A stretch of 64,000 nt of DNA, taken from assembly GCA_000388065.2 (NCBI GenBank), contig KB932202.1. The stretch is one strand, 5' to 3'. The notes under the pieces are model-generated. The model saw only the letters and a program-made list of their open reading frames with translations. It was not told where the DNA came from and did not search any database. Within the stretch, counting starts at the first letter, position 1, and each line of letters begins with the position of its first letter. The DNA is from Fonticula alba ATCC 38817 (taxonomy: Eukaryota; Protista; Nucleariida). Below, piece by piece: positions 1,854 through 63,604 of the stretch. The position numbers and the translations under genes were made by a program.

Positions 1854-2305
1854 CGTCGTGCGTGCGTGAGGCTGGAGGGGGAGACCAAGAGGAAGAGGCC
1901 GGGCGGGTTCAGCAGGAGGGTGGGGCGCGGGGGAGAAGGGTGGGGGGAGGGGAGTGGGGATGTCGTGTGAGCAGTGGGCTAGATGATGGCCGGGAGTCGA
2001 GTGCGCACACGTGCGCGCGCGCACTCTTGCGGGAGGGATGATGCGGGCGAGTGAATGTAAAGGCGAGGAAGAGGGCGCGTACGGAAAGGGAGAAAGAGGG
2101 GAAGCGGAGAGGGGGGAAGCAGTAAAAAAGATGAGCAAAGGGAGAGTCCAGGGAGGAGGGGGGGGGGGGTAAGGGTGTTGTAGGGCTTGGGAAGGGCGTC
2201 CTCGCAAGGGGCGCCGGCAAAAAAAACACCCGCCAGCCTGCAAGATCGCTTTGGAAAGACCGGCCCAGGGACAGGACCTATCTGTCTCTCCCCCCCCGGG
2301 GGGGG

Positions 2306-3109
2306 NNNNNNNNNNNNNNNNNNNNNNNNNNNNNNNNNNNNNNNNNNNNNNNNNNNNNNNNNNNNNNNNNNNNNNNNNNNNNNNNNNNNNNNNNNNNNNN
2401 NNNNNNNNNNNNNNNNNNNNNNNNNNNNNNNNNNNNNNNNNNNNNNNNNNNNNNNNNNNNNNNNNNNNNNNNNNNNNNNNNNNNNNNNNNNNNNNNNNNN
2501 NNNNNNNNNNNNNNNNNNNNNNNNNNNNNNNNNNNNNNNNNNNNNNNNNNNNNNNNNNNNNNNNNNNNNNNNNNNNNNNNNNNNNNNNNNNNNNNNNNNN
2601 NNNNNNNNNNNNNNNNNNNNNNNNNNNNNNNNNNNNNNNNNNNNNNNNNNNNNNNNNNNNNNNNNNNNNNNNNNNNNNNNNNNNNNNNNNNNNNNNNNNN
2701 NNNNNNNNNNNNNNNNNNNNNNNNNNNNNNNNNNNNNNNNNNNNNNNNNNNNNNNNNNNNNNNNNNNNNNNNNNNNNNNNNNNNNNNNNNNNNNNNNNNN
2801 NNNNNNNNNNNNNNNNNNNNNNNNNNNNNNNNNNNNNNNNNNNNNNNNNNNNNNNNNNNNNNNNNNNNNNNNNNNNNNNNNNNNNNNNNNNNNNNNNNNN
2901 NNNNNNNNNNNNNNNNNNNNNNNNNNNNNNNNNNNNNNNNNNNNNNNNNNNNNNNNNNNNNNNNNNNNNNNNNNNNNNNNNNNNNNNNNNNNNNNNNNNN
3001 NNNNNNNNNNNNNNNNNNNNNNNNNNNNNNNNNNNNNNNNNNNNNNNNNNNNNNNNNNNNNNNNNNNNNNNNNNNNNNNNNNNNNNNNNNNNNNNNNNNN
3101 NNNNNNNNN
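2306..3109. other. Assembly gap (N); probably holds the last WDR70 exon
   Basis: Run of N flanked by G runs. The WDR70 donor GTACGT at 3166 points into it. Confidence 0.95.
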
Positions 3110-3166
3110 GGGGGGCACGGGCAAGATGAAAGTTTGCCAAAGAGCCAACCGGACAGATACACGTAC

Positions 3167-4437
3167 CTTCGGCTTCCTTCGCATGGCGAAGCAGCGCCTC
3201 GCGCGGGTCGTCGAAGTTGCCGGCATCCGGCTGGCCGGTCTGCAGGGACTGCGCCACGAAATGGGCAAAGTGCGTGTTGCTGATGGCGCCGGCTTGGCCA
3301 CCGCGCGCCCGGCCAAGGGCCTTCGGCGGCTTGGCCGGCTTGGCCTGGGCACGGGCGGCCGCGCGTGCTTGTTGCGAATGCTCATCGCGGAAGAGAGGGA
3401 GGGCATCCGGCGCGACGATGCGAGTGCGATCGATGGCCCCGGTGTCGGCAGATACAACGGCCTCCATGCGCCGCGGCCGGGCCGGTGTGCCGGTGTATGT
3501 CAGCGCCCCGCGCACCGAGCAGGAGGGATCAAAGAGGATGCCAGCGCGACCCGACTGGCACCCGGCAAAGATCTGGTTCAGGCGTTGGTGCCAAAGGACC
3601 GACACGACGGGCGACAGGTCCTCATCGATGGCTGTCAGGAGGAGAGGGCAGAGGGGGCGCCAGGTGAGACTTCGGCTTGCGCTTCGCGAGAGGGGCAGGT
3701 TGACGGGGGAGAAGGAGGAGAAGGGGGAGGGGGGGGAGGGGGGGGGGCCGGAGCAGGGGCAAGACATCGCATGGTGGACTCTCGCGGCGTCCAATGCCAC
3801 CACGCACCGGGGCTGGAGCCGAGAACTCGCAGATCGGGCACGGCCAGGACATCGACCGTCCCAGCCAGGCCGCCGGCAGCCAGCATGGTGTCGTTCGGGG
3901 AGAAGGCGATCGGGCAGTGGGCCAGGAATTTGACGGTGGCAGCGTATTCCGGTGTCGGGCGATCGGCCACCGGTTTGCTCGGATTACGGATATCCCACAC
4001 TACCACCGCAGCAGGATGATGGACGTGTTCGTGTGTCAGCGCCGAGAGGGTGGGACGTGCCTACCGAAGCAGGAAGGCAGCAGCGGGGCGTGAGACGTGG
4101 AGGGAACGCACGTTTGATGGAATCCATGCCGCGAGTGGCCAGATAGTGCTCGCCGGGGGCATTCGGCCAGGCGATGGCGGTGTGCTCATCGCCGAAGGTA
4201 TATGCATCCTCGAAGACCTGGGGGGGGGGGGGCGCCATCGCCAAGAAAGCAGGGCAGGGCCGAAGGAGGGACGAAGGGTAGAGAGTCAGAATAGTGGGGT
4301 GGCCCGGCGCGCACTGGGAGGCGGGGAGAGAGCACGAGGGAGAGAGCCACAGGCGAGCATACGCACGATGTCTGGCCGGTGGCCCTGTCCGGTAGCCGAG
4401 TAGATGCGAGCTTCGCCGAGATTGGTGGCTGGAAGAG

Positions 4438-4480
<43 letters not shown>

Positions 4481-4935
4481 AGGGGGTCAGTATCCGGTCT
4501 TCCATGGGACCTGCACACCTGGTATCCGGAGAAGGCAAAGGAAACACGAGTGTTGTCGAAAGCAAAGCACATACCGACGGCCAGGCGTGTGCCATCCACC
4601 GAGTAGCGGACTTGGTTGGCACGGATGGTATGAGCAGCTCCAGTGCTGGCCCGTAGGACAATCACTCGCTTCTGGGCCCGAGGGACCACCATAGACCATG
4701 TGCTGGGACAGGCCAGGACGCGCACACATGCGCACAGTGCGATATCCCGCGCAGGCGAGCATGTCAGTGATCGTTTTCTGGGGTGCCAAGCCCACGAGAC
4801 GGGAAGGCTGTGCCCGAACCGAAGAGAGGAGCAGACACGCACCGGACCGTGCCATCCTCGGAAGAGGTGACAAATTCCTCCCGGTTGATGGGATTCCACT
4901 GAATGGATGTGATGCTGGCAACATGGCCCCTATCG

Positions 4936-36659: not shown

Positions 36660-36914
36660 NNNNNNNNNNNNNNNNNNNNNNNNNNNNNNNNNNNNNNNNN
36701 NNNNNNNNNNNNNNNNNNNNNNNNNNNNNNNNNNNNNNNNNNNNNNNNNNNNNNNNNNNNNNNNNNNNNNNNNNNNNNNNNNNNNNNNNNNNNNNNNNNN
36801 NNNNNNNNNNNNNNNNNNNNNNNNNNNNNNNNNNNNNNNNNNNNNNNNNNNNNNNNNNNNNNNNNNNNNNNNNNNNNNNNNNNNNNNNNNNNNNNNNNNN
36901 NNNNNNNNNNNNNN
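36660..36914. other. Assembly gap (N)
   Basis: N run flanked by G-rich sequence. Further N gaps occur at 41607-41727, 51793-51945, 54573-54638 and 62980-62989. Confidence 0.95.
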
Positions 36915-41583: not shown

Positions 41584-42961
41584 TCGATGTATGATGCGCC
41601 AGGGGGNNNNNNNNNNNNNNNNNNNNNNNNNNNNNNNNNNNNNNNNNNNNNNNNNNNNNNNNNNNNNNNNNNNNNNNNNNNNNNNNNNNNNNNNNNNNNN
41701 NNNNNNNNNNNNNNNNNNNNNNNNNNNAATAGAGGGGGGAAACGCAGGGAGGAAGGGGGCTTGATTGCGCCCTGGGTGAGGGAGGGCCGGACTTTGGCGG
41801 CGGCCGAAAAATGGCCACGAAGGCGTTGGCCGATGGCGGCCCGGAAACAGGGGGCATCTAATGGCCCGGGGGATGTCGGCTGTCGGCGTCCACTGCCCTT
41901 GGCCGTGGTCAAGCATGTGCGGGATCCAGCCAGGCAGGGGTCCCTGCCCGCCCTGGTGACCGGCGAACGAACAAACGCCCTCGATCGATCGTGTCGCCCC
42001 CCCCCCCCCCCCTGGCCCGTACCCCGGGAAAAAATGGCCGGCGCCCTCTTTGCAAGGCTTTCGGTAAGATTGGCTCCCGGGGCAGGCAAGGCTGGGGATA
42101 AAAAGCTGTCAAAAAGCGCTCATTTTTAAATGAAATGTGTTCTTCCGAGGCCCCTTTCCTTGCTGTCCCCCTGCGGCCCCTTGTGTGCAATCGACGTCGT
42201 GCGGCGCACGGCGCCTGTGTGTGTGTGTGTGTGGGGGGGGGGGGGGGTGGCTGGCTCGGAGGGCACCGAAAGCGGCAGAGGCGCGGGTCCGGGGGGGGGG
42301 GGAAAGAGGCAGGCATCAGCACGGCCATCGCCACGAACGACACCAAAATGCTCCCACAGTCTCGGACTGACTTCTTTCACAACACGGCGACGGGGATTCA
42401 TTTTGAACTCTCACGAGCCCGCCGGCCTCCAACGTGATGGGCGTCCATCGGGGCACGTCCACGTGCACAGCCACACCATCCCGGTGTCACGCCGGGGGAT
42501 GTTTTCATTTCGCTCGGCACATTCGGCCTGGCCATCCTTCCTTCCCCACTGGCCCTCGCCCCTGTGTACGCGCAGTGGTGGGCCCCCAGCCCCCGTGCCT
42601 GGGACTTGTCGCAGGGATTGCCCTCCAGAAGGGGGAGGGGGGGGGGGGGGCGGGGGAGCGGCAGCCATTTACATCGGGCATGTTGGCTTGCGGGGCATGC
42701 GGGGGGTTGGCCTGGCGCGGTGTGACGCTCCGGTGATGGCCTCGCACGGAGCAACACCCCCCCCCCCCCCCGGGCCGGGCCGGGCCGGGCCGGGCCGGGC
42801 TTCCCCTGCCGGACGTGCGGGCGGAGGGCGGCCCGGCTTGTGCCGAAGAGGTGCCAGCCCCCCTGCCCAGGGGACAGAGCCACCGCGTTACCCCTCTCCG
42901 GAACCTGCCACGTTCCCTCCCCTTCTTCCCCTCCTCCCCCTCTCTTTCTCGCTCCCTCACC

Positions 42962-51791: not shown

Positions 51792-51945
51792 CNNNNNNNN
51801 NNNNNNNNNNNNNNNNNNNNNNNNNNNNNNNNNNNNNNNNNNNNNNNNNNNNNNNNNNNNNNNNNNNNNNNNNNNNNNNNNNNNNNNNNNNNNNNNNNNN
51901 NNNNNNNNNNNNNNNNNNNNNNNNNNNNNNNNNNNNNNNNNNNNN

Positions 51946-53900: not shown

Positions 53901-54857
53901 ATGCTCCGCCGCCTCGCCGCCCTCGTGCCTGGGAAGGCCCTGCCACCCGGCACGACTCCCGCCTCTGGCGGGAATGTCTTTTCTCGTTCGGCTCAGTCCG
54001 CCCTCACGGCCCTGAAGGAAATGGTCGACGGCAAGGTATGCCTTCTCCCTCCCTCTCTCCCTCCCTCCCTCTCTCTCTCTCCCTCTCTCTCTCTCCCTCT
54101 CCCCCTCTCGCTCTCCCTCTCTCGCTCTCCCTCTCTCGCTCTCTCTCCCTCCCTCTCTCCCTGTCTCTCCCTCTCGCCCTTCCTCTTTCTGACATGCACA
54201 CGCGCCTCATTGCCAGGACACCCACTTGGTGGGCACCGACCAGTATGGCAATGAGTACTACGAGTCGCCGCCGCCAAACCCCCCGGGCCGGCCCCGACGC
54301 AAGGTGGTCCCCAAGGGGATGAACCCGCGCGATGTGTACCTCTACGAGTCTGGGTCCCTGCCGGTCCAGTGGCACTCGTGGCTGACGCACCGGCGGGCGG
54401 TTCCCCCTACCCTGGAGGAGATCGCCCGCGACGAGCAGCGCCGACTCGATATCCAGGAGCGAGCGCGCCTGATCGACCAGCACTGGCGCGAGGTCAAGGC
54501 TCAGGGTACGATCTCTTTGGGCTTGTCCTGCTTCCCGCTCCCCTGTCCTCCTCGCCTGCTGTCCCCCCCCCCNNNNNNNNNNNNNNNNNNNNNNNNNNNN
54601 NNNNNNNNNNNNNNNNNNNNNNNNNNNNNNNNNNNNNNCCCGCCCCCTACCTCCCGCCGATGTCTCCTGGGGTGGGCAGCACTCCGGAGGCTGTGGCCGC
54701 GCGCGAGGCCCGTGCCCAGGCGGCCGCCCCGCCCCCCGTCTCCAGCCCCGAGTATGATCCCATCCTGCCGGTGAAGGAGCTGGTCACCTCGCAGTCTCTG
54801 CCGAGCGAGACCTACCAGCCGGAAGCCTGGACCCCGGGGAAGCCCAACAAGCAGTAG
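53901..54857 (+). CDS. NDUFAF2: NDUFA12-family protein, most like complex I assembly factor NDUFAF2/mimitin (3 exons; one intron contains a gap)
   Basis: HLVGTDQYGNEYYE, LPVQWHSWLTHRRAVPPTLEEI..DEQRR, and C-terminal ETYQPEAWTPG. The PPTxEEI motif and the terminal xQPxxWxP motif favour NDUFAF2 over NDUFA12. Arg-rich N-terminus (MLRRLAALV) looks like a mitochondrial presequence. Confidence 0.82.
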
Positions 54858-56237: not shown

Positions 56238-57402
56238 AGGCCACCTCCTTGCCCTGGCCCCTGCACATGTGCGCGATCCTCACATCAAATACACCTTTAC
56301 ACATCCTGCGAGGGTGTTTTTTTCTGCCCCCCTGCTCGCTGGCAGTCGTGTAGGGCAAGTATAAAGATGCAGGCGGCAGGTGGAAGCGGAGACAGACAGC
56401 GGGGCAGACAAGGGAGAGGAGGCGTAGTTATCAGTGTATTTTTGTCTTTTTTGTTTGTTTGTTTGTTTTTTCCCTTTTCGCCCACATCCAGGAGCGCCTT
56501 GTCAGCAGGCGAGCCGGCGCATGGCGGAACGCGAGGGTGTGCCGTGCGCTCCCTCAAATGAGGCAGATGTAGCGGACCAGCTCCAGCGGGAGCCGCGAGA
56601 TGGGGCCCTCGCGGGAGATGGAAGCCGCAGTGAAGAACAGCTGCCGGTACGTGTGGTAGAGGTGCTGGGAAAGCCGACAGCCGAGCAAGGAGAGGTCAGA
56701 GTGGGGACAGGGGAGCAGGACTCACGCGAGCGAGGGCGTACGTTGCGCGCAAGGCGGCGGTGGATGATGTGATGGATGTTGCCCTCCATTGTCACACAGG
56801 GCAGGCGGGCGGAGGAGGACGAGGCAAGAAACGAGAGGGCGAGCTGGCCCAAGGGCGACTTGCAAGGGAGGAGCACGAAACGCAGGGAAGGGAGGGGGGG
56901 GGGGGAGGAGGGCGGGGATGGCTGGAACTGCGCATCAGGTCACTGGTACCATCCTTTCTGATCACCCACTGGCAAAAGGGCACCTCCTCGGGGCAGCTCC
57001 AAAGCAGGAGCAACAGCAGCAGCAGCAGCAAGGCCCCATCTCACTTACACACACGCACAAGCCCAATCGATGATCCTCCATGCCCCATCGGAAGGCGGGC
57101 GGGGGAAAATGGAACGGGACGGGGAGACGTCCGAACGAGGATCACACGCCTCTTCGAGGCATGCCGGCATCCGCGTGGCGTGATCAGTCATGCAATTCTT
57201 GCAGCTACCAACGCTTGGCGCCTGCCCCGACACCCGACACTCCAGGCCCCGGGCCTGGGCCATACACACCCCCGAAGCTGCGGCGCCGGCGTCGTTTGTT
57301 TATTCCCTCTTCTTGGAGGGGGGGGGAACACGACAGCCGGCTCGCACATTGTCGGATCCTGCCCGAGAATCACATCGCTGCATTTCAGCTACCCCACAAT
57401 GC

Positions 57403-60400
57403 CTAGATGTGGTATTCCAGCTGTTGGCCGTCCCTATGCGCCGCAGTCACCAGGGGGGAGGGGCGGGGGAAATCCGACGTGGAGCAGTCAAGAGGCGGAG
57501 ATGGGTCAGAGATACAGAGAGAAAGGGATTGAGGGAGCGGGGGGCGGGGGGGGGGGAGTGAGAGTAAATGGGTCATGTGCATGCCACCCCCGTGAGTGGG
57601 AAGAGCACGCGAACGGCAGAGAGCCGGGAAAACGGGAAATGGGCCAGGATGAGGGGATGGGAATGCGCACTTGCTCCACGCCGCGTAGCCCAGATCCACG
57701 ATGCTGGCCATGGCGGCTTGGCACTCGGAGAGCAGGTCACAGGGGGCCTGCACAGGGCTGCCACTCTGGTTCGGGTGCGCGAGCTCAAAGGCCGCCAACG
57801 CCTCGGCGGCCGGGATCGAAGGCGAGGCCCGGCAGAAGGACCCCATCGCGGACCAGTATCGGCGGTTGGCACGCAGGGCAAAGGCCAGGGAGCTGGGACA
57901 GCCGGGCCGCCGCTCGAGGCGTCCCTGGAGCTCCTCCGCCCATGCGCCCATGGCCAGGACCAGCGACCGGTCGGCGAAGGGGATGGACGACGACGGGCTC
58001 GCCGGGCCAGCAGCACCCAAGGCCCCCCGGAGGCAGGCCAAACGCAGGAGCTCCCGGCCCCCGGCCGGGGGGGGATCCAGTGCGGCCACCTCCTCCGCGG
58101 AGGCCTCCTCCAGTCCCAAGCAGACTAGGGTCGCGCGCGACCGGGAAAGCTGGCGCTCGGCCTTCAGGCGCCGGCACAAGCGCGACTCCATCCAGAAGCG
58201 CCGGTCACGCGTGGCCTCGGCCCGCGACAAACGGGCGAGATTACATCCGCCCTGCTCGGCCGGGGCCCCGGTCGCCGGCGCCAGCACCCCATCCGACAGC
58301 ACAGGCGCCAGCCAGCCCAAGAGATGGTGATCCACTTCCGAAGGGCCCACAGCGGGGGACAACTCGGGGGGGGGCTCCCTCCGGAGAGCCACGCGCGAGG
58401 GGCCCACCATTGTGGCCAGGCCCCGAGCCAGCAGCGGGCCAAGTCGAAGGCGGAGGTCGGCCTCGGACAGGCGCATCGTGTGGGAGAGTTCCTGCGGAGA
58501 GGGCCGCGCCGGCCGCAAGTCAGTGAGGGCCGATGGAAGGGGCAGCAGGAGAAAGGGGCTCGCACGGTCAACGTGCAGCCGGAAAGGCAACCGCCCCCGC
58601 GCTGCACATCCTCCAGCTCGACAAAGGGCCACTCAGCCAGGGAGAAGAGCACCGCCGCCGAGGCCAATGGGAGGGCGAAGTCCACGGGCGGCTGGCCACC
58701 GGGAGCCACCCGTCGGACCACGACCGACCCCTGGGGAAGAGGGGCCCGGGGTCCCGTCGCCCGGATGGTTAGTAACAGTCGAGACAAGGGCAGGGGGCTT
58801 GGCCAAGCTCGGCCCCTGGTAGCATGTGCTGCTGTGGGGCCGTCATACCAGGCGCGTGAATTGGAGGCGCCGGCCGGCGCGGGCCTGGCCCGTCGGGTCC
58901 GGCTCTCGGTCCCCGCCGCCGGCCCCGGCGAGGTCGTCCAGCCAGCGTGCCGTCTGTCGGAGGAGCTCGCACTGGGCGGCCCAGCCTGCCGAGCCGGCCA
59001 GGCCAAGGAACGGCCCTTCGGCCAGCGGGCTGAAGCTGAGCAGCGGCGAGTCCCGCTTGGACGGAATCAGCAGCACGGATGCCGGGAGCGTCTGGCCGGG
59101 GTCCCGGGCGGCCAGGAACATTCCGGCCCCGCGCCCGAGAAGCTGGCACAGAGCGGCCGGCGCCTCGGAGTGCTGAGGCGTCAGCTGACCCACGAACGGG
59201 GGACAAAGCAATCCGGAAGTTAGCAACATGCGCGAGGACCTGCATGGGGGGGGGGGCGGGGGGGGGGAGGCAAGAGCATCGGGGCCTTTCCTTGCTGTCT
59301 CCCACCAGGAGCCCAGCACGACATACATGCAAGCTGGCCAGGGCCAGTTGCGCGGCATCCGGGAAGCAGCCAGCCCAGCCGGCATGGTCCAAGGCCGTGA
59401 GGGGGGGGGCCGCTTCGGAGGCCGCCTGGCTGCTGCACTCGAGCGAGGGGCCGGAATCCCCGACGCCCGGTGGGAGGACACACCGGCGACAAGCAACCCC
59501 GGCCAGGACCGCACAAAAGAGGGCTCCGGACATCAGGGCGTCCAGCGAAAGCCCCGGGCCAGCTTGTCCCGGGGCCGTGGCCACCGAGCAGGCTCGCAGC
59601 ACGGACACCAGCCAGGCGGACGTGGCTTCCAAATAGACAGCCGTGCCATTGTGCACAGACACCCGGGCCCGCAGCGCGCGCCCGGTCAGTGACTCCCCCG
59701 CGGCTGGCGCCTGTCCAGGGAGAAGCTGCTGCCCGCATGCGCACAAACGCTCGGCCCAAGGGCGCGGCCGGGCACCGGGGATGTCCAGCGACTGGAACAA
59801 GCGCACCAGCCCGGCAGTGAGGGCCTCAAGGCATTCGACGTAGTACGGCTGAAGGGAGGGCATCATGGCCTGGTGCCGGAATGCACGCGTGTGCGTGTGC
59901 GTGCGCGTCATCCATTGTAATCGGGTCAGTGGACTGCGGTAGGACAGCTCCGCTGGTCGAGGGGGCCCGTTCGAAGCACAGCCGGGCCCCCTGTTCCAAG
60001 GCGTACCTCTACCAGCTGGCCACGCGCCCAGTCAGCCACCTGGCGCATTTCCTGGCCGGTGCGTGGCTGTTGAAGGAACTGCTCGAAGTCCGAATAGGAT
60101 ACCGGTGCAAAAAAGGCCCCAATCGGGCCAAGCGACAGCAGGACTACCGCCGCGTGCAGACGCCCGGCACGCTCATTCAGCTGGACTGCACCCAGAGACG
60201 CACACACAGGGCGGGGTGCCAGGTAAGTTTGGAGGACCGCACATGCGCGCGCGAGTGAGACACACACAGAGAGCGAGCGAGCGAGCGAGCGAGCGAGCGA
60301 GAAGGAGAGAGGCCTTCATGAAGAAGGGACCCCGGACCAAAAACCGCCCCAGCCAGTCGGCAAACGCACCCAAACTTTCCAGGTCGGTCGCATGCGCGAA

Positions 60401-62856
60401 GTCCAGCTCCCGGCAGGCGTCCACCAGGCAGCCGGCCAGAAGCTGCACCAGAGGCCGGGCAAGGGGCCGTCGGAAGTGCGGGAAGGCGCCCGCCGGCGAG
60501 CCGGGCTCCTCTTCCCGCGGCGTCAGGACCTGCAAACCCAGGAGCAGGCCCCGACAGCAGATCTCCAGACGCCTGAGGGCCGCCCCGCATTCCGGACTCC
60601 CGGCGATGATCTGACGCAGGCCGCGCATTAGCCTGCCCGTGTCGTACAGCCGCCCGGCCGGGGCGCCGAGATGGGTGGTCTCACGCCGGAGATCCGCGGC
60701 CCAGGTGGACACAGGGGTGGTCGGGGCTTCCAGGACAGCCGCCAGCAGGGCACGGATTTCGCCACGGGCGGCCTGCGACAGATGTCAGGGCGGAGCGGGG
60801 AAAAAAAAAATCAAAAAAGGCAGGCCGCGGGGCTGACATGGAAACAGGCCGGAAGGGGGAAGCGAAAGGGAAAGAGCGGGAAAGGGGAAAAGCTCGGAGG
60901 AGGAGAACGGAACCCCTACCTGAAGAAGACTGGCCACATGGCCGGAGAGGGCATTTTCCAGCAGGGCCTGAGCCGGGTCCGCTCCGACATCGGCCCCGGG
61001 TGACTGAAGTGCCGCGCAAAGACGGGCAACGCGTTCCCGACGCGCGAGGCCGTCCAGCAGCTGCTCCCACAAAGACGGTCAGGGGTCCCGGAAGGGGAGC
61101 ACGGAATTCGCGCAGGGCACTGAGCAAAGCACGCACACTGGTCGGGTCATCCAGCAGGCCAGCCACATCCGGCGGGGCATCTGCCGGGCCTTTGAGCAGC
61201 TCGCGGTTGAGGGCGGCACCGGCGGCAGCCAAGATGACCTGCACCGATGGAAGGGCGATCCCCTGCACTCCGCCGGCCGCTTCGGTGGGGGCACCGGCCT
61301 GGGCCTGACATAGAGCCTGGAAGAGGCCCTCCAAAGGGGGCTCGCCATGCGGGCCGAGCTCGACGAAAAGCGCCACACGCTGGGCAAGGTGCCGGCCTAG
61401 CTGGGTGCCGGTGCTGTCGAGGCAGCGCGGCCACAGGCCCTCATCGCGCAGTGCCAGCCCCAAAAGCAGGCTGGAAGTCCAAGCCCCCGAAAGGAGCGCC
61501 GGCCAGTCTGCACGCCGGGGCAGAGACTGCCATGTGCCAGCAGGCCGTCGGCCAGTCAGTCAGTCAGTCGGTCGGCCGGTCGATGGGGTGGCCGTAGCAA
61601 TTCAAGACAAACACACCGATTCCAGGGCCACCACGAGGATCTCGGCGCCGGGGACACCGGACTCAATCAACTGGAACAGCCCCGGCAGGGGGCGAGGGGC
61701 TATGGGTCAGACACTCGGACGGGCAGGCAATCTCCGCATATGCCGGGTATCGGGCGTACGCGCTCCACAGCGGGCAGGCTGTGCTGGCCGAGCAGCTGAG
61801 CCGAGACGGCCAAAAGGGCCAGCAGGAGCGACGGCACAATGGCCTGTGTGTTGCCGGCCTGCAGCAGATGGGCCAGATAGCTGCGGCCAGCAAGCAGAGG
61901 GCGAGGGCGGGGCATTGCTGCGGGGTAAGGAAGAGCACGCGAAAGCCGGCTGAGAGGGGCGACCGGCGGAGAGGGCGAAGGAAGGGGAGCATACCCGCGA
62001 AGGAACTCGAATGCCGGGCCGCGGAAATGCTCATCCCCCGCCGGGTCGGCGGACACAGCAAACACCGGCAGGCTGGCCAAGATCTCGGCCACATTGGCAT
62101 CGGGCTCCGAACTGGTGGGACCGGCGTCAGCAACAGAGCCAGAGCGGGTGCGACGGTGGCCCGTCTCCTGCGAGCCCCTGGTCGCGGTCTGCACAGGAGC
62201 CGAGTCGGCCAGCCAGACATTTAGCCACAGAAGAAGCGCCAGGTCGCGATCTGGCGCAAAGGGGCCGGCCTGCGCGTGCCAGGCAGCCGGGCAAGGTGAG
62301 TCAAGCACATGCGGCAGGGTGTGGCTGTCAGTGCTGGGCAAAGGGCAAAAGAAATCCCGCCCAGAGTCGTGGCTGCCTTGTGCCGGGGGAAACGCACACC
62401 AAGCCCGGCAACCTGCGCCACCGCTGACGCCACACTCAAGAAGGCCCCATCCAAGTTGGGCCGCGCATGGGGCCGGCCATCGCGCAGCGAGCCGGGTCCC
62501 GGCTCCCGGGAGCTCGCGAGGGGAACAAGATCGCCCGGGCGCAGGAGCAGCGTCCCGGCCACCGGCGACGGGAAAGGGTAGGACAGGCGCCCGGTGGCCT
62601 GATCAAAGACCAGCGGCGCCCCGCCGGCCGCCCGGGATAGCAGCCCGTATAGCGACTTCCCCGGCCGGAGAAGGGTGTCCACACCACGGAGATCGGACAG
62701 CCGGGCTGGACGCCCGGCTTCGGCCGAAGCAGCCGCCGCACCAGCAGCAGCCGTCCCCCAGATATGGCGACCGGCATCCCCGGCGGCCAGGAAGCCCAGC
62801 ACATGTCCGGCGTCGATCGGGCCCGCTGGCTGGGGGTCGGGGTCATGGGGGGGCAT
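57403..62856 (-). CDS. Divergent cullin-family protein (cullin-homology C-terminus plus winged-helix/neddylation-type domain), multi-exon
   Basis: Spliced GRRLQFTRL|GSVVVRR..FALPLASAAVLFSLAEWPFVELED|ELSHTMRLSEADLRLRLGPLLARG, then DRRFWMESRLCRRLKAERQLS..LVCLGLEE and CQAAMASIVDLGYAAWSK|LEYHI*. A perfect TACTAAC branch point at 58774-58768 supports the key splice. N-terminal exons from ATG 62856 are Ala/Leu-rich and I could not assign them. Confidence 0.68.
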
Positions 62857-63604
62857 TCACGGCAGGAGAGCGGCGCGCCAGACAGGGCAAGGATGAAGGA
62901 CTGAGACAACCGGCGTGCGGGTGGAAGAAGGGCGCCGAGAGGAGGCGGGGGGGGGGGGGGGGGAAGAGAGAAAGGGGGGNNNNNNNNNNGGCTGGGGCAT
63001 GCAGGGGCCGCGGGAAGCCGCCTGGAGACCGATGGGTGCAAAAAAGCACCCAGGGTGTCCGGATTGGGGGGACACCGCTCGCGCCCGCGCCCGCGCCCAC
63101 GCCCGCGATGTGGAGGACCTCCTGCGGCTCGGAGCTGAATCCAGGCGTATCCGAGAAAAAAAACCCCACTGAACGCGTGTTCGCACGGAGAGAGACAAAG
63201 GCCGCAATCAAAATCAGGAACATGGACACGATCGACCCCGGACGAGACGAGTCACATGACACGTGGTCGGGACATCCCGCCGGACGTGCCGACCTCGAGG
63301 AAAAAAAAACAACAAAAAACGCCGCAATCAAGGCAATAAAAAAGGCACAATACCCGGCAGGCAGGAAACGCCCAAGGGGCGGGGAGGGTGGGCGGCGAGA
63401 AAAAGCGAGGCATACCGCGAGTGCCACGAGTAAATGTATGTATATTCTGGGCAGGGGGGAGGGGGGGGGGAACAAACCGAAAGTAGGAAGGGGCGGAGAA
63501 AAGAGCCCCCGCAAAAGGGCCGGAGCCAGCTGGCCGGCGGGGAACCCAGCCGTCGTCGTGTGCAGTGCATACACACACACACACACACACACACATCGGC
63601 ACCA

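What the first reader, a model, noticed from the sequence alone, without database searches (positions are those of the whole stretch)
57403..62856. Divergent cullin whose C-terminus resembles animal CUL7/CUL9
Seen in sequence: the spliced C-terminus has a cullin-homology layout followed by a winged-helix domain with a Lys in RRLKAER (codon 58164-58162). This matches the neddylation-site position (cullin consensus IVRIMKxR). Recalled comparison, needing verification: RRLQFTRLG, LSEADLRLRLGPL and LVCLGLEEA resemble human CUL7/CUL9 RRLQWTWLG, LSADMLNQAIGPL and LVCLVLEAW more than CUL1-5. CUL7/9 are generally described as animal-restricted. The large N-terminal part shows no recognisable CPH, DOC or RBR domain. 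Inference: either an unrecognised CUL7/9-type ubiquitin-ligase scaffold outside animals or a lineage-specific cullin with a novel substrate-recruiting N-terminus. APC2 is the main alternative.
Basis: partly seen in the sequence, partly recalled or inferred. Interest (0 to 1): 0.72.

Follow-up and report, generated by a model that had tools for sequence, protein, structure and literature searches.

The report
Orphan divergent cullin of Fonticula
A transcribed 12-exon gene of the amoeba Fonticula alba encodes a 1,343-residue orphan protein whose tail looks like a very divergent cullin (ubiquitin-ligase scaffold) domain with an unusually expanded last winged-helix domain. The proposed kinship with animal CUL7/CUL9 is not supported.

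Summary
The gene is real. Spliced transcript contigs confirm 11 GT-AG introns and one 1,343-aa ORF on the minus strand (62856..57403), including the 58.5-58.9 kb splices. The genome is Fonticula alba, and the public model is hypothetical protein H696_01191.

Pfam, PDB sequences, two word searches and an exhaustive HMMER search (of the last large exon only) find no relative. Three lines still point to a cullin C-terminal domain:
- Protein-language-model neighbours are all cullin/APC2 clusters.
- The Lys-bearing helix and the extreme C-terminus match the Nedd8-type winged-helix (WHB) domains of Fonticula's four ordinary cullins (hhalign P 7e-4 and 0.04; no shuffle comes close).
- A small-alignment AlphaFold model of that region superposes best on Cdc53/CUL1/CUL5 WHB (Z 9-10), above CUL7 (8.3) and APC2 (6.7). 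The alignment biases this model.

The WHB region is about 190 aa instead of about 75. It is either split by a helical insertion or present as two tandem copies, the second with Arg at the Lys position.

No CPH, DOC or RBR domain and no CUL7/9-specific similarity was found. The "CUL7-like" motifs also occur in Fonticula's own cullins. The best reading is a lineage-specific fifth cullin. APC2 remains a serious alternative.

The parts
57403..62856 (-). Coding region, 12 exons, 1,343 codons plus stop (stop at 57403-57405). The public model H696_01191 (P0001, 1,279 aa) covers the same gene.
   Evidence: Spliced contigs of run X1; GT..AG check and single ORF; P0001 is 100% identical over exon 11.
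62398..62856 (-). Exon 1 (aa 1-153), starting at the ATG at 62856.
   Evidence: The joint to exon 2 is seen in one contig (depth 4) and resolves to GT..AG intron 62270-62397. The public model has the same junction.
61760..62269 (-). Exon 2 (aa 154-323).
   Evidence: The public model removes 61877-61990 as an extra intron, for which no joint is listed.
61617..61670 (-). Exon 3 (18 aa).
   Evidence: Joints 61670/61760 and 61526/61617 in X1 contigs.
61137..61526 (-). Exon 4 (aa 342-471).
60920..61060 (-). Exon 5 (aa 472-518).
   Evidence: Joint 61060/61137 in a contig. The public model starts this exon 57 nt later.
60370..60772 (-). Exon 6 (aa 519-653).
60007..60185 (-). Exon 7.
59327..59869 (-). 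Exon 8 (aa 713-893).
   Evidence: The 2,288-nt contig record 1 spans exons 8-12. The public model starts this exon 21 nt later.
58849..59184 (-). Exon 9 (aa 894-1005), ending in RRLQFTRL.
58566..58730 (-). Exon 10 (aa 1006-1060).
57671..58491 (-). Exon 11 (aa 1061-1334). It holds the WHA-like end, the Lys-bearing helix and most of the expanded WHB region.
57403..57433 (-). Exon 12: the last 10 codons (the wing end, ...LEYHI) and the stop. The 3' UTR reaches at least 57286.
   Evidence: Joint 57432/57670 in contig record 1, which continues to 57286.
59537..62856 (-). N-terminal ~820 aa, Ala/Leu/Gly/Pro-rich, with no recognisable domain. Presumed helical scaffold or substrate-recruiting arm.
   Evidence: No Pfam hit at E<=1 to 10. 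Whole-protein language-model neighbours are full-length cullin/APC2 clusters. Function is inferred.
57955..59536 (-). Cullin-like C-terminal domain as tested by the language model (P0001 760-1175; introns included in these coordinates).
   Evidence: All ten best named Atlas neighbours are Cullin_AB/Cullin/Cullin_Nedd8 or APC2 clusters; best score 0.92, 207 of 256 features shared.
58399..58875 (-). WHA-like stretch (aa 997-1091; introns included). It holds RRLQFTRLG, the helix VDFALPLASAAVLF and the helix LRLGPLLARGL.
   Evidence: Layout only. hhalign is not significant (P 0.24 at the expected place; P 0.63 for the first half). A 17-aa match to cullin C1a lies at the homologous helix.
57964..58209 (-). 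WHB unit 1 (aa 1155-1236 = P0001 1091-1172): Lys-bearing helix, short strand and second helix.
   Evidence: hhalign against the four Fonticula WHB exons: P 7e-4 within the whole C-terminal domain and 6e-5 for the unit alone. 159 shuffles reach at most 20.6 against 28.6 observed. AF2 pLDDT is 86-93.
58162..58164 (-). Lys codon (AAG): K1170 of the 1,343-aa model, K1106 of P0001. Candidate neddylation site.
   Evidence: It is invariant in alignment A2.
57865..57963 (-). Helical linker between the two WHB-like units. In the split-domain model it is part of the ~120-aa insertion (57748-58107).
   Evidence: AF2 predicts helices with pLDDT 41-78.
57406..57864 (-). WHB unit 2 (aa 1270-1343 = P0001 1206-1279; includes intron 57434-57670). 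It ends in the canonical cullin C-terminal helix and wing, with the stop codon directly after.
   Evidence: Smith-Waterman aligns it end to end with the whole WHB of cullins C1a and C1b (P 3e-4 and 1.4e-4; 0 of 1,000 shuffles). hhalign matches columns 43-69 (P 0.006-0.037). AF2 pLDDT is 89-95.
57829..57831 (-). Arg codon (aa 1281 = P0001 R1217). It sits at the Lys position if unit 2 is read as a complete WHB.
   Evidence: Pairwise alignment to C1a; coordinates.

Best explanation
The gene encodes a fast-evolving fifth cullin specific to the Fonticula lineage. It is neither an orthologue of CUL7/CUL9 nor, on balance, APC2.

Inferred mechanism:
- The C-terminal ~520 residues form a cullin C-terminal domain (alpha/beta region, WHA-like part, Nedd8-type WHB). 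This domain would hold a RING-H2 partner, most likely RBX1, by taking up its N-terminal strand.
- The ~820-residue helical N-terminus would recruit adaptors or substrates.
- Lys1170, in a canonical helix context (R at -3, hydrophobic residues at -1, -4, -5, -9), is the candidate NEDD8 acceptor.

The WHB region is expanded from about 75 to about 190 residues, in one of two ways:
- one WHB split between helix 2 and helix 3 by a ~120-residue helical insertion; or
- two tandem WHB copies, the first with Lys and the second with Arg at that position.

Shown: transcription and splicing, the ORF, the statistical similarity of the WHB parts to Fonticula's own cullins, and the absence of detectable relatives elsewhere. 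Inferred: the alpha/beta domain (language model only), RING binding, neddylation, and the role of the N-terminus.

I put about 0.8 on 'cullin-superfamily C-terminal domain' and about 0.5 on this specific reading.
For: - Gene model: spliced contigs with 11 GT-AG introns and one 1,343-aa ORF.
- Language model: neighbours of the whole protein (0.91) and of residues 760-1175 (0.92, 207/256 features, 10 of 10 in the same clan) are cullin/APC2 clusters.
- tblastn against the four Fonticula cullin loci: the best hit of the whole protein is the neddylation helix of cullin C1b, 12 of 22 residues identical, including the unusual C and AER residues. Further collinear hits lie at the WHA third helix and the WHB third helix of C1a.
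- hhalign against the four-paralogue WHB alignment: 1091-1114 matches columns 1-24 (score 28.6, P 7e-4, Lys on Lys) and 1251-1277 matches columns 43-69 (P 0.037).
- Controls for that comparison: 159 shuffles have mean 11.6, SD 2.1, maximum 20.6. The N-terminal 759 aa and reversed sequences score 9.8-13.3.
- Smith-Waterman with shuffles: P 0.002-0.0001.
- AF2 on alignment A2: pLDDT 86-95 for the WHB core.
- VIA-align: the top hits are all neddylatable cullin WHBs. Cdc53 scores 10.3, CUL1 10.0 (rmsd 2.0 A over 76 aa), CUL5 9.3 and CUL4A 8.2, against APC2 at 6.5-6.8.
- The protein ends directly after the wing, like all four paralogues.
- It is single-copy in the genome.
- No relative of the last large exon was found in 1.84 billion cluster representatives. 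That fits a young, fast-evolving duplicate.
Against: - No Pfam Cullin, Cullin_Nedd8 or other profile hit, even on short pieces.
- No match to any solved cullin sequence.
- The 4HB, alpha/beta and first WHA blocks show no significant similarity to the paralogues.
- A crude six-block chain score was not significant (p ~0.06).
- The AF2 model and its fold matches depend on an alignment made with the paralogues, so they lean towards a canonical WHB.
- The single-sequence AF2 model was useless (pLDDT 38).
- Position -2 from the Lys is Arg rather than Ile/Val. In the tandem reading, the terminal WHB has Arg at the Lys position.
- Fonticula already has four Nedd8-type cullins while its APC2 is unaccounted for.
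Confidence: 0.5

Rival explanations
1. It is Fonticula's APC2. On this reading it is the cullin-like subunit of the anaphase-promoting complex, binds APC11 through its alpha/beta domain, and is so divergent that APC2 profiles no longer see it. The Lys would be incidental.
For: - APC10 and an APC11-like RING-H2 gene exist.
- No ANAPC2 or TPR_ANAPC2 match exists anywhere in the genome. The only Pfam Cullin loci are the four that also carry Cullin_Nedd8.
- 12 of the 30 best whole-protein language-model neighbours are APC2 clusters.
- Other APC/C scaffold subunits are also at or beyond Pfam's reach here: ANAPC5 gives no hit and ANAPC4 only 19 bits. A very divergent APC2 is therefore expected.
Against: - The only significant sequence similarity is to Nedd8-type WHB domains, with Lys on Lys and residues shared with one particular paralogue.
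- The WHB model fits Cdc53/CUL1/CUL5 (Z 9-10) better than APC2 WHB (Z 6.5-6.8), although the model is biased.
- At 1,343 aa it is well above the 612-654 aa of the APC2 clusters listed.
- The genome is a draft with many N runs, and the six-frame Pfam search is insensitive here. The missing APC2 may simply be unseen.
Confidence: 0.28
2. It is a CUL7/CUL9-type scaffold outside animals. That would mean an ancient opisthokont origin of that family.
For: - The Lys-bearing WHB and an N-terminus lacking a recognisable first cullin repeat (CR1) resemble CUL7's general plan (PMC9507964).
- The CUL7 WHB is among the structural matches (7z8b_C, Z 8.3, 16% identity).
Against: - No CPH or DOC profile hit in the protein, and the only DOC-type hit in the genome is elsewhere. 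There is no RBR domain.
- No sequence match to any PDB cullin chain, for the whole protein or for three C-terminal-domain segments.
- Canonical WHBs score higher than CUL7.
- The same 'GPL' helix and Lys helix occur in Fonticula's own cullins.
- CUL7/PARC is chordate-restricted, derives from Cul-alpha and is easily aligned with canonical cullins (PMC2785787). It is described as vertebrate-specific in PMC9507964 and PMC11257990.
Confidence: 0.03
3. It is not a working cullin. Either the similarity is chance on a biased, helix-rich orphan protein, or it is a decayed cullin duplicate that no longer binds a RING protein and serves another role, or none.
For: - No profile hit and no relatives anywhere.
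- Only about 50 residues carry significant similarity.
- The language-model calibration allows 4-10% of shuffled proteins to reach 0.9.
- The composition is extreme, at about 70% GC.
Against:
- The hits are collinear, lie at homologous positions, and the last one ends exactly at the stop codon.
- The gene is transcribed, correctly spliced and keeps a 4-kb ORF across 12 exons.
Confidence: 0.12

Closest known systems
Canonical neddylated cullins (Cdc53/CUL1, CUL3, CUL4, CUL5), and specifically Fonticula's own cullins at C1:3724.6-3726.6k ('C1b') and C1:2260.8-2262.4k ('C1a')
   Same: - Lys-bearing WHB helix: 12 of 22 residues identical to C1b.
- Terminal helix and wing ending at the stop codon.
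- Fold match Z 9-10, rmsd ~2 A over ~75 residues.
- Language-model neighbours carry Cullin_AB/Cullin/Cullin_Nedd8.

   Different: - No Pfam Cullin or Cullin_Nedd8 hit.
- 1,343 aa with an unrecognisable ~820-aa N-terminus.
- WHB region ~190 aa instead of ~75 (split or duplicated).
- Arg at -2 from the Lys.
- No detectable orthologue in any other organism.
APC2 (ANAPC2), the cullin-like subunit of the anaphase-promoting complex
   Same: - It belongs to the cullin superfamily and is too divergent from canonical cullins for easy alignment (PMC2785787).
- Many language-model neighbours are APC2 clusters.
- The genome otherwise lacks a recognisable APC2.
   Different: - No ANAPC2 or TPR_ANAPC2 profile hit.
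- The WHB resembles the Nedd8 type and keeps the Lys.
- Weaker structural fit to APC2 WHB (Z 6.5-6.8).
- Much longer than the APC2 clusters listed (612-654 aa).
CUL7 / CUL9 (PARC)
   Same: - Large atypical cullins whose N-terminus is not a standard CR1 arm.
- The WHB displays a Lys at the CUL1 K720 position (PMC9507964).
- WHB fold match Z 8.3.
   Different: - CUL7/9 are defined by ARM repeats, a CPH domain, a DOC domain inserted in CR2 and, for CUL9, an ARIH-RBR module (PMC11257990, PMC9507964). None of these is detectable here.
- They are chordate or vertebrate-specific and easily aligned with cullins. This protein is not.
Highly divergent lineage-specific cullins of protists, microsporidia and giant viruses
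   Same: The nearest language-model clusters come from Euglenozoa, Microsporidia and Nucleocytoviricota, with only partial Pfam coverage. As here, they are cullin-like proteins that standard profiles barely recognise.
   Different: Those clusters still carry Cullin_AB or Cullin_Nedd8 hits in a share of their members. This protein carries none and has the expanded WHB.

Membership tests
Cullin family (canonical, neddylated) | Match to the Cullin / Cullin_Nedd8 sequence profiles | tested here: not met
   hmmscan at E<=10 on raw ORFs, exons, the whole public protein and short pieces gives no cullin family. The six-frame PF00888 and PF10557 searches hit four other loci but not this one.
Cullin family (canonical, neddylated) | C-terminal WHB winged helix with a Lys at the neddylation position, ending at the C-terminus | tested here: met
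   - hhalign against four Fonticula WHBs: P 7e-4 and 0.037, with Lys aligned.
- Shuffle and real-sequence controls.
- AF2 core pLDDT 86-95.
- VIA-align Z 10.0-10.3 to CUL1/Cdc53 WHB.
- Caveats: the model leans on the paralogue alignment, and a tandem register puts Arg at the Lys position of the terminal copy.
Cullin family (canonical, neddylated) | 4HB plus alpha/beta domain that takes up the RBX1 N-terminal strand | tested here: inconclusive
   Language-model neighbours of residues 760-1175 are Cullin_AB clusters (0.92). There is no significant sequence similarity to the paralogues' 4HB or alpha/beta exons and no usable structure. RBX1 binding was not tested.
Cullin family (canonical, neddylated) | N-terminal cullin repeats (CR1-CR3) that bind an adaptor | not testable with these tools
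CUL7/CUL9 | CPH domain and a DOC (APC10-like) domain inserted in the cullin repeats; ARIH-RBR module in CUL9 | tested here: not met
   No Pfam family at all on the protein at E<=10. The only ANAPC10/DOC hit in the genome is on contig 14.
CUL7/CUL9 | Sequence similarity of the cullin region to CUL7/CUL9 above that to CUL1-5 | tested here: not met
   phmmer of the whole protein and of segments 925-1030, 1080-1135 and 1230-1279 against all PDB chain sequences finds no cullin. The CUL7 WHB is structurally below Cdc53/CUL1/CUL5.
APC2 | ANAPC2 C-terminal WHB profile and TPR_ANAPC2 N-terminal profile | tested here: not met
   No hit on the protein or anywhere in the genome. The control note says these searches rang nowhere, so sensitivity is uncertain.
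APC2 | Being the genome's APC2 orthologue (phylogenetic placement; sole candidate) | tested here: inconclusive
   No other candidate was found. However, ANAPC5 is also undetected and ANAPC4 is marginal, and the assembly has many N runs. No APC2 sequences could be fetched for a tree.
APC2 | Binds APC11 and sits in the APC/C platform | not tested
   The APC11-like gene was located (L012). No complex prediction was run, because neither partner has an alignment and the exon limits of APC11 and RBX1 are unverified.

The most novel reading that the evidence does not exclude
The protein is a new architectural variant of the cullin scaffold. Its neddylation module is rebuilt in one of two ways: a WHB split by a ~120-residue helical domain inserted next to the acceptor Lys, or two tandem WHB domains, one keeping the Lys and one carrying Arg, which could act as a built-in decoy or autoregulatory copy. 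This module is coupled to an ~820-residue N-terminal arm unrelated to known adaptor-binding repeats. A sub-case is that this is Fonticula's APC2 and has kept a Nedd8-type WHB.
Probability: 0.25. Interest if true: 0.55.

Novelty: new variant of a known kind. Interest (0 to 1): 0.36.

Why it matters
Cullins are the scaffolds of the largest family of ubiquitin ligases, and their C-terminal WHB domain is the switch that NEDD8, CAND1, DCN1 and the COP9 signalosome act on. A transcribed cullin-like protein invisible to every standard profile shows how far this scaffold can drift in a close relative of fungi. An expanded or duplicated WHB would be a natural experiment on that switch.

It also bears on annotation. 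Fonticula's APC2 is unaccounted for, and this gene is the only extra cullin-like candidate.

The headline claim, CUL7/CUL9 outside animals, would have been a surprise for cullin evolution. The evidence here is against it, so the finding is of moderate interest only.

Tried and rejected
- RNA-seq raw reads of three runs with the same species label (X6, X12, X13) gave only poly-G artefact reads at 59246-59267 and 62944-62964. They say nothing about this gene.
- Pfam on ORFs, exons, the whole protein and short pieces: nothing.
- PDB sequences with the whole protein, two exons and three segments: no cullin.
- Word search with exon 11 and with the whole public protein: only the protein itself.
- Exhaustive HMMER of exon 11 against 1.84 billion representatives: only itself. 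E-values are scaled to that library, so a weak relative of about 30-40 bits would not be listed.
- The last word search, meant to collect a deep cullin alignment from the WHB of cullin C1a, found 11 candidates and no hit. No deep cullin, APC2 or CUL7 alignment could be built, so no tree was made.
- AF2 on residues 640-1279 without an alignment: pLDDT 38, unusable.
- Mini-HMMs of four paralogues: WHB ranks the gene first of 881 decoys, but at only 6-8 bits; WHA fails.
- A six-block ungapped PSSM chain: p ~0.06.
- hhalign for the first half of WHA: not significant.
- Smith-Waterman of the 4HB and alpha/beta exons: not significant.
- Foldseek on the WHB model: Cdc53 WHB ranks first, but at E 0.55.
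- An internal repeat between the two WHB-like units: not supported (P 0.38).
- Complex prediction was not used. Neither chain has an alignment, and the exon limits of RBX1 and APC11 are unverified.
- The joined 1,343-aa spliced model was not sent to any search tool. Exons were searched by reference, and the public 1,279-aa model P0001 stood in for the whole protein.

Full report
**Bottom line.** The specific link to animal CUL7/CUL9 is not supported. The most likely reading is a fast-evolving fifth cullin specific to the Fonticula lineage, with an expanded WHB region. APC2 remains the main alternative.

**Gene model.**
- The region is about 66-73% G+C and full of long chance ORFs in all frames, so outside evidence was needed.
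- One search for sequencing runs found four small 2012 runs that hold the stretch.
- Laying run X1 on 57030-62979 gave contigs with eleven joints whose skipped parts read GT..AG on the minus strand. The eleventh (62270-62397) resolves to GT..AG after a one-base shift.
- A single 2,288-nt contig crosses exons 8 to 12 and runs into the 3' UTR as far as 57286.
- Removing the eleven introns gives one ORF of 1,343 codons, from the ATG at 62856 to the stop at 57403-57405.
- Three RNA-seq runs carrying the same species label gave only poly-G artefact reads and are uninformative.

**Organism and public model.**
- Earlier notes of this scan name the genome Fonticula alba.
- The exhaustive protein search returned the database entry for this gene, P0001, named by NCBI 'hypothetical protein H696_01191 [Fonticula alba]'.
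- P0001 has 1,279 aa. It differs from the transcript-based model at three places: 61877-61990 is removed as an extra intron, and later acceptors are used at 61004 and 59849.
- Following the operators' rule, I searched the spliced model exon by exon, by reference, and did not send the joined 1,343-aa sequence to any search tool. P0001 served as the whole-protein reference.

**Relatives elsewhere: none detectable.**
- Pfam finds nothing on ORFs, exons, the whole protein or short pieces at E<=10.
- phmmer against all PDB chain sequences finds no cullin for the whole protein, two exons or three C-terminal segments.
- Two word searches and an exhaustive HMMER search of exon 11 against 1.84 billion representatives return only the protein itself. 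The last E-value is scaled to the whole library, so weak relatives could be missed.
- The gene is single-copy in the genome.
- No paper mentions the locus tag.

**Evidence that it is nevertheless cullin-like.**

1. Language model. The neighbours of the whole protein are cullin or APC2 clusters (best 0.91). Those of residues 760-1175 are all Cullin_AB/Cullin/Cullin_Nedd8 or APC2 clusters (0.92, 207 of 256 features). A score of 0.9 alone occurs in 4-10% of shuffled proteins.

2. Fonticula's own cullins. The genome has four Pfam-detectable cullins, each with a Cullin_Nedd8 hit. I read their WHA and WHB exons from the genome.
   - In a tblastn of P0001 against these four loci, the best hit of the whole protein is the neddylation helix of cullin C1b (12 of 22 identical).
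   - Further hits lie at the third WHA helix and the third WHB helix of cullin C1a, all collinear and in the correct frames.

3. hhalign of residues 760-1279 against the four-row WHB alignment gives two local alignments.
   - Residues 1091-1114 match columns 1-24 (score 28.6, P 7e-4), with Lys on Lys.
   - Residues 1251-1277 match columns 43-69 (score 18.7, P 0.037), ending at the protein's last residues, as in every cullin.
   - 159 composition-preserving shuffles gave best scores of 11.6 +/- 2.1, maximum 20.6.
   - The protein's own N-terminal 759 residues and reversed sequences score 9.8-13.3.

4. Structure. AlphaFold2 on a five-row alignment (P0001 1085-1279 plus the four WHB exons; A2) gave mean pLDDT 71, with 86-95 over residues 1-40 and 170-195.
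   - VIA-align against 48,161 PDB representatives ranks six cullin WHB domains first: CUL1 Z 10.0 (rmsd 2.0 A over 76 of 79 residues), CUL5 9.3 and 8.6, Cdc53 9.2, CUL7 8.3, CUL1 8.3. Generic winged helices follow at Z<=8.1, with APC2 WHB at 6.7-6.8.
   - The second look gives Cdc53 10.3, CUL1 10.0-9.4, CUL5 8.8-8.6, CUL4A 8.2 and APC2 6.5-6.8.
   - This model leans on the paralogue alignment, so it is corroboration rather than independent proof.

**What is not supported.**
- The RRLQFTRLG block and the first half of WHA (hhalign P 0.63).
- The 4HB and alpha/beta regions at the sequence level.
- A crude six-block chain score (p ~0.06).
- The single-sequence AF2 model of 640-1279, which was useless (pLDDT 38).

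The alpha/beta domain therefore rests on the language model alone.

**An expanded WHB.** The Lys-bearing helix and the terminal wing are about 135 residues apart, so the WHB region is about 190 residues instead of about 75. Two registers fit the data.
- Split domain. In the AF2 model, helices 1-2 (P0001 1085-1124) pack with helix 3 and the wing (1245-1279), around a ~120-residue helical insertion of lower confidence.
- Tandem domains. The last 72 residues (1206-1277) align end to end with the complete WHB of C1a and C1b (Smith-Waterman P 3e-4 and 1.4e-4; 0 of 1,000 shuffles). Arg (codon 57831-57829) then stands at the Lys position. Unit 1 (1091-1172) aligns globally with the WHB profile at P 0.0017.
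- The two units are not detectably similar to each other (P 0.38).

I could not resolve this. It matters because, in the tandem reading, the terminal WHB is a natural Lys-to-Arg form, and the Lys1170 helix belongs to an extra, internal copy.

**CUL7/CUL9.**
- The family is defined by ARM repeats, a CPH domain, a DOC domain inserted in CR2 and, for CUL9, an ARIH-RBR module (PMC9507964, PMC11257990). None is detectable here, and the genome's only DOC-type hit lies on another contig.
- CUL7/PARC is restricted to chordates, derives from the Cul-alpha lineage and was 'easily detected and aligned' with canonical cullins (PMC2785787). This protein matches no cullin sequence in the PDB.
The Lys helix shares 12 of 22 residues with C1b, and the 'GPL' helix shares 8 of 17 with C1a.
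- Structurally, the CUL7 WHB ranks below Cdc53, CUL1 and CUL5.
- I could not fetch CUL7/9 sequences for a direct alignment, so the recalled strings themselves remain unverified.

**APC2.**
- For: Fonticula has APC10 and an APC11-like RING-H2 gene as well as RBX1, so it must have an APC2. No ANAPC2, TPR_ANAPC2 or additional Cullin match exists in the genome. Many language-model neighbours are APC2 clusters.
- Weakening that argument: ANAPC5 is also undetected and ANAPC4 reaches only 19 bits. Non-detection of an APC/C scaffold subunit is therefore normal here. The assembly also has many N runs.
- Against: the only significant similarity is to Nedd8-type WHBs, including residues peculiar to one paralogue, and the fold fit to APC2 WHB is lower.
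- I put APC2 at about 0.28.

**Mechanism (inferred).** As a cullin-type scaffold, the C-terminal domain would bind a RING-H2 protein (RBX1; APC11 if it is APC2) by strand insertion into the alpha/beta domain. The long helical N-terminus would recruit adaptors or substrates. Lys1170 would accept NEDD8, if the helix that carries it is positioned as in canonical cullins. The inserted or duplicated WHB material lies where RBX1's RING, DCN1, CAND1 and the signalosome act on ordinary cullins, so regulation is likely to differ. None of these steps was tested.

**Novelty and score.** No paper mentions the gene, and no relative is detectable. Very divergent lineage-specific cullins are known from other protists, and the most surprising claim (CUL7/9 outside animals) fails. 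The expanded WHB is, as far as I know, unusual. I rate the finding a new variant of a known kind, interest 0.36.

Noticed in passing
window 59246-59267 and 62944-62964: Raw RNA-seq reads of three runs with the same species label (X6, X12, X13) touch the stretch only at two short G-rich spots. They continue as long poly-G tails and give false 'joints' of about 3.7 kb. They look like two-colour sequencer poly-G artefacts, and the runs seem not to contain this organism's transcripts for this locus.
   Followed up: partly
window 61877-61990, 61004-61060, 59849-59869: The public protein model H696_01191 (1,279 aa) lacks 38, 19 and 7 residues that the transcript contigs of run X1 keep or support. 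It has one extra predicted intron and two later acceptor sites. These could be annotation errors or alternative splicing.
   Followed up: partly
window 57434-57670: The last intron (237 nt) is in frame and has no stop codon. Intron retention would add 79 residues inside the terminal WHB helix-wing region without truncating the protein.
   Followed up: no
L018 (G000:C1:2258500-2265500), about 2290-3261 minus strand: One of Fonticula's Nedd8-type cullins (C1a) appears to carry an in-frame Ala/Ser/Gly/Pro-rich stretch of about 250 residues between its WHA and WHB, in a 324-aa open frame. Large insertions in cullin C-terminal domains may be a habit of this lineage. It may be the 'divergent cullin catalytic module' noted elsewhere in this scan.
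   Followed up: partly
L019 (G000:C1:3722000-3728500), 4420-4626 plus strand: Cullin C1b has an unusual neddylation helix (…LLCRIMKAERTLS…) that is the closest match to the Lys helix of the gene studied here. Its WHA exon also holds long Ala/Gly-rich insertions.
   Followed up: partly
L012 (G000:C2:3193829-3196954) and L013 (G000:C1:4135172-4138270): L012 encodes an APC11-like RING-H2 protein with an insertion of about 25 residues between the N-terminal strand (…VAAWYW…) and the first zinc ligands. L013 encodes RBX1 (…WNAVALWSW… and …CPLDNREW…), split into at least three exons.
   Followed up: partly
G000 whole genome: Six-frame Pfam searches find no ANAPC5, no ANAPC2, no TPR_ANAPC2 and only a 19-bit ANAPC4 match (C3:1625160-1625429), although APC10 and APC11 are clear. 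The platform subunits of Fonticula's APC/C seem to be unusually divergent.
   Followed up: partly
L020 (G000:C2:1049000-1054500), 1-2750: The upstream half of the fourth cullin locus reads entirely as N (an assembly gap or a withheld stretch), so that cullin's N-terminal repeats cannot be read. The window itself has six N runs (2306-3109, 36660-36914, 41607-41727, 51793-51945, 54573-54638, 62980-62989).
   Followed up: no
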